5,373 bases of DNA, taken from NCBI GenBank assembly GCA_965644315.1, contig CBFFRQ010000156.1:1-5373 (forward strand), in the 5' to 3' direction. Under the pieces are notes generated by a model. That model was not told where the DNA came from. It saw only the letters and a program-made list of their open reading frames with translations, and did not search any database. Position numbers and translations under genes: made by a program. Numbering within the stretch: position 1 is the first letter of the stretch; every line of letters starts with the position of its first letter. The DNA is from Caecitellus pseudoparvulus. Its lineage: Eukaryota; Protista; Bigyra: Bicosoecida. Below are positions 1 through 5,373 of this stretch, piece after piece.

Positions 1-1269
1 AGCCGAGGCATTTTGACCAGCTATCAGAACAGATCCCGTTGCTAGCACTCCCTCAGAGACTTTGACGAGCACATGTCCTGATCGATGAGTCCCGCTTGTT
101 GATGAAGCTTGAAGTTTGTTTGAGGTTGTTTGTGACGCTCCCGTGGTAACGTTGACGTTACCTGTCAAGGCTCTGTGCCCAAACCCAGATGAAAGTTTCA
201 AAGCCGCACCCTTTGTCACTGACGGTCCTGTGTGAAAAATCATATCACCACTCACGCTGGTTGAGGCGCCTGTGCGCAAGTACAAGCCTCCCCCCCGAAC
301 TTGTGCCTGACCAGGACTGATGTGCACCCCCCCACTTGCACCGAATGAACTTCCTTGCAAATCTCCTGTTTGCAGAGAAACTTTTCCAGAGATTTGAGCA
401 CAGTTGCTCATAAGCGAAATCCCCGCGGAAGTTCCTCCCATCGCCGTAGCCGCTCCAGTGAGAACAGATACTGTGCCGGATTGGGCCGAAGAGGCTCTGC
501 CTGATCCCACAATTGCAGACTGTGAGCTTGATTTGCTTGTACCCGACGCAAATTCAATTCCTCCACTCCGAGATTCCGCATTCCCAGTCGCAGTGGTGAC
601 GAGTCCAGACGCTTGTGCCCCACTTGCAGACTGTATTCTGAGCTCGCTGCCAGTGGTGTTCGGGTTTGAACTTGATCCACTCGAAATGTGATAGCTACCA
701 GAAGCTGTCGTTTGGCTTCCTCCAGTCCCAAGTACTAGATTGCCCGGCACCATTGGAGCAGATCCCCCTTTCAAGTGAACATGGCCAGATGACAAAGCGT
801 TCCCGGATCGAAGAACCACACTGCTTGACGCGATTTCATGTGCAGTCGAACTAATGGTGATTGGCTGACTGAGTGGAGGCAGAGCTTGTGTCACTTTGTC
901 CGCACCAACACGAACAATGCCCGGATACAACGGAGAGCTCCCAGCCCTGATTGAAACTCTAGAGGGTTGCTCTGGAACCCCAGAATCAGCGCCTCGAACA
1001 AAAATCGAACCTGGTCCGTCCCCACTTGACTCCGACACAAGGTATATGTTTCCACCTTGAACTACACTATCAGCAGTTCGCAAAGAAACATTCCCCGACT
1101 CTCCATTGCTCTCACCCGCAAAAACAAAAACACCGCCAGTTTCAAAGGCATCACCCGAACGAACATGCCCGTCTCCCGCGGAAACCAATGCCCCGCTCGT
1201 GCTCAGACCCACCTGCCCACTTGCAACAGCACTGTGATGGCCAGGATCAATATGCTGCGAAAAAACATG
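1..1269 (-). repeat. Continuation of the same repeat pattern in a Gly-poorer, lower-GC block
   Basis: The units persist (GGVFVFAGESNGE / SGNVSLRTADSVVQ / GGNIYLVSESSGDG / PGSIFVRGADSG; SGGIEFASG; SGTVSVLTG). Gly is about 16% (68 of 420 codons counted over 1-1260), with more Ile/Leu/Phe/Tyr/Lys/Asn/Pro than in the upstream block. The boundary is approximate. Confidence 0.75.
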
Positions 1270-4200
1270 CACATCCGACCCTTCAACACTCAAACTGCCA
1301 CCCACTCCCTCCGCTGACTCACCAGCACCAGCCACCACGCGCTCACCAGTGCCAGCCTCAAGCCCCACATCACCCCCCACCAAACCACTACCACCCGACA
1401 CCTGCACAGTTGACCCCATACCAGCAAGCACGCTCACTGAGCCGCCCACAAGCCCATCGCCACCCTGCACACCGACAGCCCCTGCAACACCACCCCCACC
1501 TGCGCCCGACACCATGGCTACTGACCCGGCCTGTCCTCCCACGCTTCTCCCCCCCGCCACCGACACAGCACCATGGCCTCGACCAACCCTCGTGCTCACA
1601 TCACCAGCACCCAGCACTCCCCCGCCACTGCCAATCGCCACAGCGCCAGACCTGCCCACAGCGCTGTCCCCGCTGCGCACATCCAAGGCCCCTGACGCCA
1701 CACCACCACCTGACATGCCGGTGCCCAATGCCACACTGTCCCCGCCCTCAATGCTGACTGACCCACTCTGTTCGCTCGAGCTTGAGCCGCTCACAGCCAA
1801 CACAGTACCTCCACGCACAGCTCGGCCACCACCACCAAGGACTCTGACCTCCGACCCCGCAACAGCAATGCTGCCGCCCTCCACACCCCCGCCAGCGGAC
1901 ACAGTCACATGGCCGGCTGTCGCCCCTTCCCCGCTCACAATGCGGGACTCCCCCCCATCATCACTGCCATCGCCTCCACCGACCCTGACACCTGCCGCAC
2001 CAGCCAACTCCACACCACCCCCCTGACCCTGCCCACGCCCCGCCCCAACACCAACACTCGACCCAGACAACACAACTGACCCCGACGCCAGGCTGCTTTG
2101 CCCAGCACCCACCATGATCGACCCTGCCGTGCTGCTTCCCTCGCCCACCCGCATGGTCACATCCCCACTTGCACCTTGCCCGGCACCGCTCCCCAGCACA
2201 ACACTGCCGGACAGCCCCCCATCACTTGCACTGCCGCTCCGCACCTGCACACGGCCACCTCCCCCATGCACAGATGCCCCTGCATGTACACTCACGGCGC
2301 CCCCAGCACTCCCCACCACACCGGCATCGCCACCCGCCCACCTCACGCTGCCACCAACGCCCCTCGCCGCCACGCCTCCCCTCATCGCTAGCCTGCCACC
2401 AACTCCTCCATCGCTGACACCGCTGGACACTGTGACACCCCCCCTTCCCACGACACGCACGTTGCCGCCGCTCCCTGCAGCGCCACCAGCAACGACACTG
2501 GAGCCACCACCAACACCTGCATCTGATGCTCCACCTGACACACCCACACTGCCTCCCACGATGCCCACCGCCCCTGCCCCTGTACCGCCATGGCCTGCTT
2601 GCACTGACAAGCCACCACTAGTGCCGTTCACACCCCTCCCGCTCACGACGCGCACAGCCCCACTACCACCTGCACTGCTGCCGCTCCCCAGACTCGCTGC
2701 ACCGCTGGACCCTCCTGAGCTGGAACCGCTGCCCAGTGTGACGCCCCCACTGGCCCCACTGCCGCTGCTACTCACCGTCACATTGCCTGATGCTCCATGC
2801 TCAGACCCACCAGCTGCTGCACTCACACTGCCACCAATCACACTGCCATCACCACCGACCAAGTGCAAGGCGCCACCACCCACCGCACCACTCCCGACCG
2901 CCACCTGCACCGCACCGGACTCACTGCCCTCCCCACTCGTCATCATCACACCCCCTGACGAGCCACCAGAGCCGCCACTCTGCACACCCACGGCGCCCCC
3001 ACTCGCCACACCCACACCATCTGCCCCGATCACCGTGACAGAGCCGCTGCTGCCCTCCAGAGCGCTGCCTGTGACCACCGCTAGAGCCCCCCCTGACCCA
3101 CTCCCAGCAGCACCACTGCCAAACACCACGCTGCCACTTGCTTCACCGCCTCCACTTAGCACCGTCACACCACCGCTGCCCGCTGCAGTACTGGACCCAC
3201 TCCTGGTGCTGACAAGCCCGCTCGTGCCGTTCACACTTGACCCGCTGGACACCTCAACTGCAGAGCTTGCATCATCGCCCCCACCTCCACGCACCACGGC
3301 TCCCCCACCCACATCACCCCCACCACCAGCCGCCAAAGCGTGACCACCGCCCTGACTCCCGGCACCCGCCTCGACAGTCAAAGACTCTGCTTGCATCTGC
3401 AAGGCACCGCCCGCGCCCTGGCTGGAGCCCACCATGAGCTTCGCGCCCCCCCCAGCAGACCCAAGCGACACGTCGCCCACTTGCCCACTTGCCAGCAGGA
3501 CTGCCTCGCCAGCCACCAATGCCGACCCTGATGCCTGGACGCCGATGTCTCCGCTGCCTGCCACCCCTGTGCCGGTGTGCATGGCCAGTCCTCCGCTGCG
3601 CCCCGATGTGGCCACTCCGCTTGCCAACACAAGCGAGCTCCCACCTGCTTGGCTGCTGCCTGCCTGCGCTGCAACACGCCCACTCCTGCCCCCCGCCCCG
3701 CTGATGACAGCGACGCCGCCCCCCTCTGACATGCTCAATGCAAGGCTATCGCCCCCTTGCACCTCCACAGTGCCTGATGTAGTCGTGCCAGGGCCTGTGC
3801 CAATGCGCACCTGCCCACCCTGCCCGCTGGCCCCCGCTGAGCCAACTCCCACCTCCACGCGGCCACTTGAGCCACCAACTGAACCACCGTGCCCGCTCTC
3901 CAGTGTCAAGGCACCTGACCCTCTCGCGCCCTCGGCACTCGACACTGATACCTCGCCTGTCGTCGCTTCCCGCCCTGACAAGGCTTCAGAGAACCTGAGC
4001 CCTTCACCTTGTAGTGCCAAGACCAACCGCCCCACCACATCGTCGTGCAGCATAGGACCACCCTCTCCACTGGACAGGATAGCACGCAAACTATCTTGTG
4101 CGCTGGCCTGACTGCCCCCTGATGCGATGCCTGATACGAGCGGCAGAGACAAAGCCGCGATGCGGCGCGCAGCCACATCGCTCACCGGCGCCCCTTGCTG

Positions 4201-5373
4201 TCCACGAGACAAGGCTTGGACGACAGCCCCCACCACCGTCGCCGGGGCATGCACCGAGCCACGCCCATCAACCGACAGCCTGCCATCTCCCCCTGCACTG
4301 AGCACCATGCCTTGGCCACTGCCCACAGCCACTGCACCGCCGTCCAACACAGCACCACTGCCAGATACCCCGAGCGCTGTCGAGCCCACACTCAACGACC
4401 CCCCACTAGACTCCAACACCGACACACCACCCTCCAGTCGCACAGACCCAGTGCCGTGCATGCTGATGTTTCCGCTTGCTTCAACAGCGACGTCACCGCC
4501 GGACTCACCTCCCCCAGCCACACCAACCACGCTCCCACCACCAGCTACACGTGATGCCCCCGACTCAACCCCCACCACGCCACCGCCGCCAACCCGCACA
4601 CCGCTTCCACCGGCCAACCGCAAGCCACCATCAGCATGTGTGCCTACGTCCACATTGCCTGCACCAACCACGCCTACTGACTGCCCAGCGAAAGACACCT
4701 CACCCCCAGCACCGCTGCCACTGGCCCCCCCGTGCACTCGCACGGCACCACCCAAACCGCCCTCGGCGCGGCCCCCCCGCACGGCTGCATCGCCTGCGTG
4801 CACTGCAGCTGCACCGCTCTCAATGGACACGCCCCCGCTGCCATGACTCCCACTGCCGCTCCCCACATCCACGCCACCGGCCCCCACGACGCTCACCGCG
4901 CCACCCGCCACACTGATGCCGCCTGACTCAACACGCCCCGACCCACTCTCATGTGCAACATCACCACCTGCCCCTGCCTTGCTGCCTCCACCTGCCACTT
5001 CGATCGCCGTGCCCCTCACATGCACACCTCTGCCGGACACTGCCACGCCGCCCGGTCCATGAACGGCAGTACTGCCCCCCACAGCACCCCCACCACCTGC
5101 CACACTCACCAGACCACCCACAGCAGTCCCCGACCCACCCAACAGCCCCACATCACCCGATGCCGTCGACACTGACACATCGCCCGCTGCACTCGTGCCG
5201 CCCCCTGACAGCACTGACACGCCACCCTGGCCCTGCACTTGCATCTCCGTCTGCACCTGCACTTGCACGCTGCCGCTTGCGTGGGAGTCCGCTGAAGCAA
5301 GCGTGGACACTGCCACTGAGCCGGCTGGGCCTGCTGTGGAGCTGCCACCAGCAACGTTGACACTTGTACCGAA
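1..5373 (-). CDS. Partial (open at both window edges) giant Gly/Ser/Val/Ala-rich repeat protein, >=1791 aa; probable extracellular beta-solenoid/fibre-like protein of unknown function
   Basis: Plus-strand triplets in frame 1 (positions 1-3, 4-6, ...) are never TTA, CTA or TCA, so the corresponding minus frame has no stop in 1791 codons (manual reading). The translation is coherent throughout, e.g. SGLVSTRSGSSTAAGSGGVTVLSGGGEASGSVVFGSGAAGSGSGGALAVVTGSALEGSSGSVTVIGADG (about 3222->3016) and SGKVSLQTGDLQGSSFGASGGVHISPGQAQVRGGGLYLRTGASTSVSGDMIFHTG (about 390->226). Synonymous third positions vary (GGT/GGC/GGG/GGA), as expected for a real coding frame. The function is inference. Confidence 0.93.
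1270..5373 (-). repeat. Degenerate protein-level tandem repeat array (~13-15 aa period), Gly-rich block, interrupted at ~3961-4260
   Basis: Consecutive units such as SGSVVLGSGAGQGA / SGDVTMRVGEGSST / AGSIMVGAGQSSLA / SGSVVLSG (about 2211->2062). Hydrophobic residues (mostly Val, codon GTG) alternate within each unit. No exact DNA tandem repeat is visible, so the repeat is conserved only at the protein-pattern level. Confidence 0.85.
3961..4260 (-). other. Non-repeat in-frame insert (~100 aa) within the repeat array
   Basis: Translation: GSVHAPATVVGAVVQALSRGQQGAPVSDVAARRIAALSLPLVSGIASGGSQASAQDSLRAILSSGEGGPMLHDDVVGRLVLALQGEGLRFSEALSGREAT. The GG-V-x-V pattern is lost and the segment is Leu/Ala/Arg-rich. 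The repeat resumes directly afterwards (TGEVSVSSAEGARGSGALTLESG). Confidence 0.7.

What the first reader, a model, noticed from the sequence alone, without database searches (positions are those of the whole stretch)
1..5373. Hidden giant ORF: the whole window is one stop-free minus-strand frame missed by the ORF track
Seen: 1791 codons with no stop, open at both edges, so the protein is at least 1791 aa and probably much longer. No intron is needed to keep the frame over 5.4 kb. Seen: a highly restricted composition, with 1 Cys (400-402), 1 Trp (2338-2340), 4 Tyr (all below position 1050), only 2 Lys in 1261-5373 and no Pro between 1261 and 3789 (manual counts). Inference: this is a very large structural or surface protein that automated annotation would probably mis-call as antisense 'mucin/extensin-like' Pro-Thr ORFs. 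The pattern resembles my unverified recollection of giant uncharacterised G/S-rich repeat proteins in stramenopiles (oomycetes, pelagophytes) and of some phage/virus fibre proteins.
Basis: partly seen in the sequence, partly recalled or inferred. Interest (0 to 1): 0.8.

Follow-up and report, generated by a model that had tools for sequence, protein, structure and literature searches.

The report
Internal piece of giant fibre gene
The window is a real, stop-free slice of a giant glycine/serine-rich protein gene of a marine protist, most likely a three-chain extracellular fibre; its two ends join in frame because it is one unit of a repeated gene that the assembly probably closed into a loop.

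Summary
Confirmed: minus frame 1 has 1,791 codons and no stop, and every manual count holds. Strain differences favour this frame: 24 of 40 synonymous, p=2e-5, none nonsense, one 3-nt indel. The protein is a ~14-residue GxVxVxSG repeat plus a ~90-residue helical insert.

New here: in contigs of two other studies base 5373 joins base 1, in frame and in repeat register. Bases 1298-5370 lie 3-8 times deeper than 1-1297 and branch in frame into other sequence. The window is therefore probably one unit of a repeated, cassette-built giant gene, closed into a loop by assembly.

Only 12 weak relatives were found among 1.84 billion proteins. Three carry a MYRF-like S74/ICA chaperone inside the same repeat. 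The window's insert sits in that slot and resembles its tail, but has no catalytic lysine: probably a dead relic (about 65%).

Best reading: the shaft of a trimeric beta-helical fibre, working like the TLP-12 glycofibril but not a member of it. The scan found this family before on other pieces of this genome. Expression, start, stop and fold are untested; the own genome was not available.

The parts
1..5373 (-). Stop-free reading frame, 1,791 codons, internal piece of a giant Gly/Ser/Val/Ala protein
   Evidence: strain differences mostly synonymous in this frame
1..1297 (-). Segment U (aa ~1360-1791): low-depth, AT-richer spacer (GC 0.52, GC3 0.41) with the same ~14-residue repeat; holds all Tyr, the Cys, 8 of 10 Lys, 14 of 21 Pro
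   Evidence: depth lowest in all four runs; composition; repeat autocorrelation peak at lag 14
1298..5370 (-). Segment M (aa 2-1359): multi-copy, G-rich cassettes (GC 0.67, GC3 0.60), 3-8 times deeper than U, with in-frame branches into other sequence at 3349, 4506, 4826 and 5370
   Evidence: tables 2, 7, 8; loose ends translate open in frame, and the 4506 branch differs between runs by two synonymous changes; ratios
3964..4242 (-). Helical insert (aa 378-470), probable catalytically dead relic of an S74/ICA chaperone domain; no Lys
   Evidence: four helices at pLDDT about 50-65; tail matches a profile of related ICA modules at 8.1 bits, 0 of 2000 shuffles; same slot in the repeat pattern; no Pfam, hhalign or fold match
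4243..4602 (-). Run of short 7-10-residue repeats directly before the insert, as found before live S74 domains in relatives
   Evidence: median strand spacing 8 here, 9.5-10 in three relatives, against about 14 further away
1354..3963 (-). Main shaft of 13-16-residue repeats (G-x-V-x-V-x-S/G-G plus Gly/Ser loop), mixed with shorter ones
   Evidence: spacing mode 14-15; motif 33 times against 2.0 +/- 1.4 in shuffles; model with weak beta-solenoid matches
5371..5373 (-). Codon at the joint: base 5373 is followed by base 1 in other runs' contigs; frame and 14-residue register are kept across it
   Evidence: table 5 (runs X3, X4; 37 letters on the short side); translation on both sides

Best explanation
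The window is an internal unit of a giant nuclear gene (or small gene family) of a marine protist that encodes a fibre protein. Shown: the frame is coding and under purifying selection; the protein is about 120 short hydrophobic strands separated by Gly/Ser loops; most of the DNA exists in several near-identical copies that branch in frame; the end joins the start in frame. Inferred: three chains wind into a parallel beta-helix, with the two Val of each repeat facing the core and the Ser-rich loops outside, possibly glycosylated. Folding would be driven by live S74/ICA chaperone domains elsewhere in the chain, which trimerise and cut themselves off. The insert here is probably a dead ICA that survives as an uncut three-helix collar. 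Inferred for the DNA: a low-copy spacer (U) lies between two copies of the shared cassette (M-U-M), the assembler closed U+M into a 5,373-bp loop, and the shared cassettes are kept alike by gene conversion or recent duplication, which would also explain their higher GC.
For: Coding frame. Repeat. Relatives share the repeat, and three of ten scanned carry Peptidase_S74 inside it; that domain is MYRF-ICA-like with intact S/A-DERxK; a further one occurs in L009. ICA domains fold triple beta-helices, use a Ser-Lys dyad and trimerise by their last helix (PMC8326128). A solved protist-type precedent exists (TLP-12, bioRxiv 10.1101/2025.09.30.679562). Joint, depth step and branches recur in runs of different studies, with M1/U ratios of 5.7, 5.7 and 6.3. 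The composition change point (G content at 1269, GC3 at 1332) lies at the depth step (1298-1327). Unchecked AI notes describe >21,000-codon fibre genes with live and dead S74 domains in this genome.
Against: Relatives are weak (best E 5e-8, 29-37% identity) and match only through the low-complexity repeat. No trimer could be modelled; the monomer model has pLDDT 68, pTM 0.47, no Foldseek hit and best Z 6.1 at rmsd 7.8, which is background level. The ICA relic is borderline: hhalign E 0.15, pairwise shuffle p 0.02-0.16, only the tail matches, and the single-sequence model resembles generic helix bundles, not an ICA. The tool warns that contig depth is no copy number. No RNA run holds the stretch. 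The own genome could not be searched, so the link to the other giant genes rests on notes I could not check.
Confidence: 0.7

Rival explanations
1. Same gene and DNA structure, but the repeat folds as a single-chain beta-solenoid (curli-, S-layer- or autotransporter-like stalk), and the insert is an unrelated helical spacer.
For: The monomer model's best matches are CsgA (Z 6.1), SufBD-type beta-helices and RsaA; the insert has no significant match to any ICA library model or structure.
Against: Only one hydrophobic strand per 14 residues and few Asn (20 in 1,791) make a self-contained core unlikely (inference); relatives with this repeat carry the trimer-folding ICA domain; a monomer run cannot show an intertwined trimer.
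Confidence: 0.17
2. The gene belongs to an endogenous virus or other mobile element (polinton-like virus, virophage, giant virus) and encodes a virion fibre; its multi-copy state reflects several insertions.
For: S74-bearing fibre genes of up to 3.9 k residues are common in polinton-like viruses (PMC12220804); nearest Atlas clusters include viral ones; the DNA is multi-copy.
Against: No relative in IMG/VR contigs, phage genomes or PHROGs; copies share only parts and branch in frame into other coding sequence; related loci run for 7-20 kb as the same repeat with no viral gene called.
Confidence: 0.06
3. The 5,373-bp unit is a real extrachromosomal circle or a long head-to-tail array, so that the frame is endless on the DNA itself.
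For: The ends join exactly, in frame and in register; short-read contigs cannot tell a circle from M-U-M.
Against: U is several-fold shallower than M, and M mostly continues into other sequence at 5370; the ratio is similar in three studies; the unit has no start, stop or non-coding room for a promoter; only 34-37 letters of M are shown next to the joint.
Confidence: 0.04
4. The protein is an unstructured, elastic or gel-forming Gly-rich polymer (silk- or mucus-like) rather than an ordered fibre.
For: 43% Gly+Ser, almost no aromatic residues; M has drifted to 30% Gly.
Against: Regular spacing of hydrophobic strands conserved against distant relatives; near absence of Pro over 850 residues.
Confidence: 0.03

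Closest known systems
TLP-12 glycofibril and its Amoebophrya candidate proteins (Li et al., bioRxiv 10.1101/2025.09.30.679562)
   Same: Giant (about 20,000 aa) protist proteins of short Gly/Ser repeats; ICA domain in the same chain or family; solved as a three-chain beta-sheet stem.
   Different: TLP-12 has a 12-residue GSxxSx7 repeat and a C-terminal ICA, in alveolates. Here the period is 14-15, GSxxS is not enriched (8 against 13 in shuffles), the ICA slot is internal, and the host is probably a stramenopile.
Peptidase_S74 / ICA domain proteins: MYRF (7dc3), phage long tail fibre (6f45), GA-1 neck appendage (3gud), endoNF
   Same: The relatives' domain matches these structures (E 3e-15 to 5e-4); short repeats precede the slot as in a beta-helical stalk.
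   Different: The window's insert is about 30 residues shorter, has no Lys and no DxRxK motif, and is not detected by Pfam; it lies inside the chain with more shaft behind it.
Unnamed GxIxIxSG repeat proteins: Aphanomyces euteiches CAK4417441.1, proteins of GCA_000428205.1, JGI and Logan fragments
   Same: Same 13-15-residue repeat with conserved Gly spacing; multi-kilobase frames; internal S74 in several.
   Different: Only 29-37% identical; their S74 motifs are intact; they use Ile/Leu and Ser where this window uses Val and Gly; no function is described for any.
S74-bearing fibre proteins of polinton-like viruses (PMC12220804)
   Same: Large modular fibre proteins with S74 in protist genomes.
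   Different: There S74 is C-terminal behind laminin-G or collagen repeats, in proteins of up to 3.9 k aa inside viral elements; no viral context or match was found here.

Membership tests
TLP-12 dodecapeptide glycofibril proteins | 12-residue repeat GSxxSx7 | tested here: not met
   period 14-15, lag-12 autocorrelation near zero; GSxxS 8 observed against 13.2 +/- 3.5 shuffled
TLP-12 dodecapeptide glycofibril proteins | ICA domain at the C terminus | not testable with these tools
   the C terminus is outside the window and the genome was not available
TLP-12 dodecapeptide glycofibril proteins | Three chains woven into a triple beta-sheet stem, O-glycosylated | not testable with these tools
   only monomers can be predicted; model inconclusive
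Peptidase_S74 / ICA domain (window insert) | Match to PF13884 | tested here: not met
   no Pfam family up to E 10
Peptidase_S74 / ICA domain (window insert) | Ser-Lys catalytic dyad (S-D-x-R-x-K) | tested here: not met
   no Lys between aa 133 and 644; dyad defined in PMC8326128
Peptidase_S74 / ICA domain (window insert) | C-terminal trimerisation helix | tested here: inconclusive
   predicted helix aa 444-467; matches the relatives' helix end and next strand at 8.1 bits, above 2000 shuffles and all other windows (best 2.2), but hhalign E 0.15; test made after seeing the resemblance
Peptidase_S74 / ICA domain (window insert) | Position directly after a run of short beta-helix repeats | tested here: met
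   spacing 8 before and 14 after the insert; 9.5-10 before and 9-14.5 after in three relatives
Peptidase_S74 / ICA domain (window insert) | ICA fold | tested here: inconclusive
   single-sequence model, mean pLDDT 43, matches only generic helix bundles
Unnamed GxIxIxSG 14-mer repeat proteins with internal S74 | 13-15-residue repeat with one hydrophobic strand and conserved Gly | tested here: met
   12 hits at E 5e-8 to 7e-4
Unnamed GxIxIxSG 14-mer repeat proteins with internal S74 | A live S74 domain in the same chain | not testable with these tools
   none inside the window; reported for other pieces of this genome only in unchecked notes
Viral or phage fibre gene | Relatives or context in viral genomes | tested here: not met
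   no match in PHROGs, IMG/VR or phage genomes; flanking context not available
Secreted / surface protein | Signal peptide or membrane anchor | not testable with these tools
   neither terminus is in the window; 8 of 20 Asn lie in N-x-S/T, which a 21% Ser+Thr protein partly explains

The most novel reading that the evidence does not exclude
The shared cassettes are a working length- and module-variation system: recombination between near-identical coding cassettes adds, removes or swaps fibre segments in frame and in repeat register, dead ICA collars mark uncut joints while live ones set the cut sites, and loop-out can release a real 5,373-bp circle with an endless reading frame.
Probability: 0.1. 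Interest if true: 0.8.

Novelty: new variant of a known kind. Interest (0 to 1): 0.5.

Why it matters
Giant ICA-folded glycofibrils of protists were recognised only in 2025, from pond-water cryo-EM, with candidate genes in alveolates and no known function. A 14-residue variant with internal live and dead chaperone domains in a widespread marine protist would extend the class and give a source for matching orphan fibril maps to genes. It also shows how such genes are lost in annotation: no start or stop in the contig, antisense decoy ORFs, and repeats that assemblers fold into loops. This window adds the DNA-level picture (shared cassettes, in-frame joint, GC step at the copy boundary); the protein family itself was already noted elsewhere in this genome by the scan.

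Tried and rejected
Three word searches (aa 1370-1791, aa 280-560, segment U) were blank; they see only proteins of 0.55-1.75 times the query length. Pfam, PHROGs, NCBIfam and PDB sequences gave nothing relevant. Scans of JGI metagenomes (22, 25), viral contigs (26, 95), prokaryotic genomes (60) and phage genomes (96) found no relative; one search gave four ordinary phage S74 loci. No DNA-level tandem repeat inside the window; short direct repeats reflect the codon pattern. The exact protein is not on record. Rejected: chance open frame; coding on the plus strand (18-60 stops); TLP-12 membership; a live protease in the insert (no Lys). The two S74 copies in L009 are identical and inverted, possibly an amplification chimera, so they count as one. 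Paper searches for this family in stramenopiles found nothing. I did not submit a sequence joined across 5373/1 to any search.
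Full report
1. The observation. Minus frame 1 runs through all 5,373 bases without a stop (1,791 codons); the other five frames have 18-60 stops. Shuffles give at least 39 stops, or 13 when codon-position composition is kept. The mechanical ORF list leaves it out and shows plus-strand ORFs of up to 409 aa. 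Contigs of four public runs from four studies differ from the window at 40 listed places (24 more were not shown): 24 are synonymous in this frame against an expected fraction of 0.28 (p=2e-5, pN/pS about 0.26), none is nonsense, and the only indel is three bases. The frame is coding and under purifying selection. No RNA run holds the stretch, so expression is untested.

2. Source. Near-identical DNA occurs in 20 runs of 10 studies, including marine metagenomes; names are coded. Other notes of the scan call the organism a GC-rich marine stramenopile flagellate; I could not check this, as no genome is held for the window. Nothing suggested human DNA.

3. The DNA is a self-joining unit of shared cassettes. 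In contigs of runs X3 and X4, bases 5337-5373 are followed directly by base 1. The length is 3 x 1,791, so the frame is kept, and the residues on both sides form one regular 14-residue repeat. Depth is lowest over 1-1297 (segment U) and steps up at 1298-1327. Relative to U, parts of 1298-5370 (segment M) are 4-8 times deeper in three runs and about 3 times in the shallow fourth. The tool warns that depth is no copy number, but branch points say the same: other contigs leave the window's sequence at 3349, 4506, 4826 and 5370 in two to four runs each, and the 27-30 loose letters are open in the same frame; at 4506 the runs differ by two synonymous changes. Short-read contigs show only 34-37 letters of M beside the joint and cannot exclude a true circle or array.

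4. The protein. About 120 short hydrophobic strands (G-x-V-x-V-x-S/G-G) recur with a spacing mode of 14-15, mixed with 6-9-residue units; the motif occurs 33 times against 2 in shuffles. Family libraries and three word searches were blank. Because these left the protein open I used the full profile search once: aa 360-1559 gave 12 hits among 1.84 billion proteins, E 5e-8 to 7e-4, all through the repeat. They include an Aphanomyces euteiches protein, a Picochlorum protein and fragments of multi-kilobase frames. Three of ten scanned carry Peptidase_S74 inside the repeat, closest to the MYRF ICA structure (E 3e-15); another lies in L009. A model of aa 700-905 from a 71-row alignment of repeat tiles reached pLDDT 68, pTM 0.47, had no Foldseek hit, weak beta-solenoid matches (best Z 6.1), and Atlas neighbours at TM 0.43-0.46 that include an oomycete cluster and a viral S74 cluster. 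This is compatible with parallel beta structure but does not prove a fold.

5. The insert. Residues 378-470 (3964-4242) break the repeat and are predicted as four helices. They follow a run of short repeats and precede long ones, as the S74 domains of the relatives do. The last helix and next strand resemble the end of those domains (LALQxxxxRF against AALQxQxKRF/L): 8.1 bits, above all 2,000 shuffles and all other windows of the protein. Other tests are weaker (hhalign E 0.15; p 0.02-0.16; no Pfam or fold match), and the test followed the observation. There is no Lys in or near the insert, so the Ser-Lys dyad (PMC8326128) is absent. I put a dead ICA relic at about 65%. Unchecked notes describe dead and live S74 domains every ~1,975 residues in another piece of this genome; the unit here is 1,791 residues with one insert.

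6. Mechanism. Shown: coding frame, repeat, multi-copy cassettes, in-frame joint, S74 in relatives. From established knowledge: ICA domains trimerise through their last helix, fold the upstream triple beta-helix and cleave themselves. Inferred: three chains wind together, Val residues fill the core, Gly/Ser loops face out and may carry glycans; live ICA domains elsewhere fold and cut the precursor, dead ones stay as collars. At 4.8 A per strand (half the 9.6 A rise of the two-strand TLP-12 repeat) this unit would give roughly 60 nm of fibre, or up to twice that if each loop adds a second strand. The biological role (tether, coat, feeding thread) is not addressed by any evidence here. Confidence 0.7; rivals are a single-chain solenoid (0.17), a viral fibre gene (0.06), a true circle or array (0.04) and a disordered polymer (0.03).

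7. Comparison and novelty. It works like TLP-12 and phage or polinton-like-virus fibres, but fails the TLP-12 repeat test (period 14-15, no GSxxS) and the insert fails the catalytic test for S74. It belongs with an unnamed group of 14-residue-repeat proteins with internal ICA domains; paper searches found no description of that group in stramenopiles, within the limits of the library. Rating: new variant of a known kind. The scan reported this family before on other pieces of the same genome; what this window adds is the cassette structure and the in-frame loop. Interest 0.5.

8. Left out. I did not search or fold a sequence joined across the 5373/1 joint; the two sides were only read next to each other. 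The frame could not be extended.

Noticed in passing
None of four runs shows an indel there, and a codon model (trained on the main frame, so biased) does not prefer the other frame.
   Followed up: partly
window 894-903 and the ~40 bases below: The only place where a 13-codon window scores better in another minus frame; it lies in the Pro-enriched irregular segment (aa ~1454-1505).
   Followed up: no
window 1228-1274: Cluster of differences next to the U/M boundary, three of them non-synonymous, shared by runs X1 and X4 but not X3; possibly two alleles or a conversion-tract edge.
   Followed up: no
window 1-1327 against 1298-5370: Differences between runs are 1.1-1.7% in U and 0.4-0.55% in M; M contigs are collapsed over copies, so the figure is biased low.
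   Followed up: partly
window 3193 and 3672: Loose ends seen only in run X4 do not read as repeat sequence in this frame; probably other organisms or diverged paralogues at 85% likeness.
   Followed up: partly
L002 1-20736 and L009 1-20245 (GCA_000428205.1): Two 20-kb stretches made almost wholly of the same repeat in several overlapping frames; L009 holds two identical S74 copies in opposite orientation, possibly an amplification chimera.
   Followed up: partly
L004 1-3504 (GCA_004144985.1): A protein labelled 'tail fiber domain, Methanosarcinales archaeon' has the MYRF-like S74 and 14-residue repeat of this group and may be protist DNA in an archaeal bin (inference).
   Followed up: no
L001 3-7715: The Aphanomyces euteiches contig is one repeat frame of 1,997 + 573 codons with a single stop at 5994-5996; the annotated 859-aa protein covers only part of it.
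   Followed up: partly
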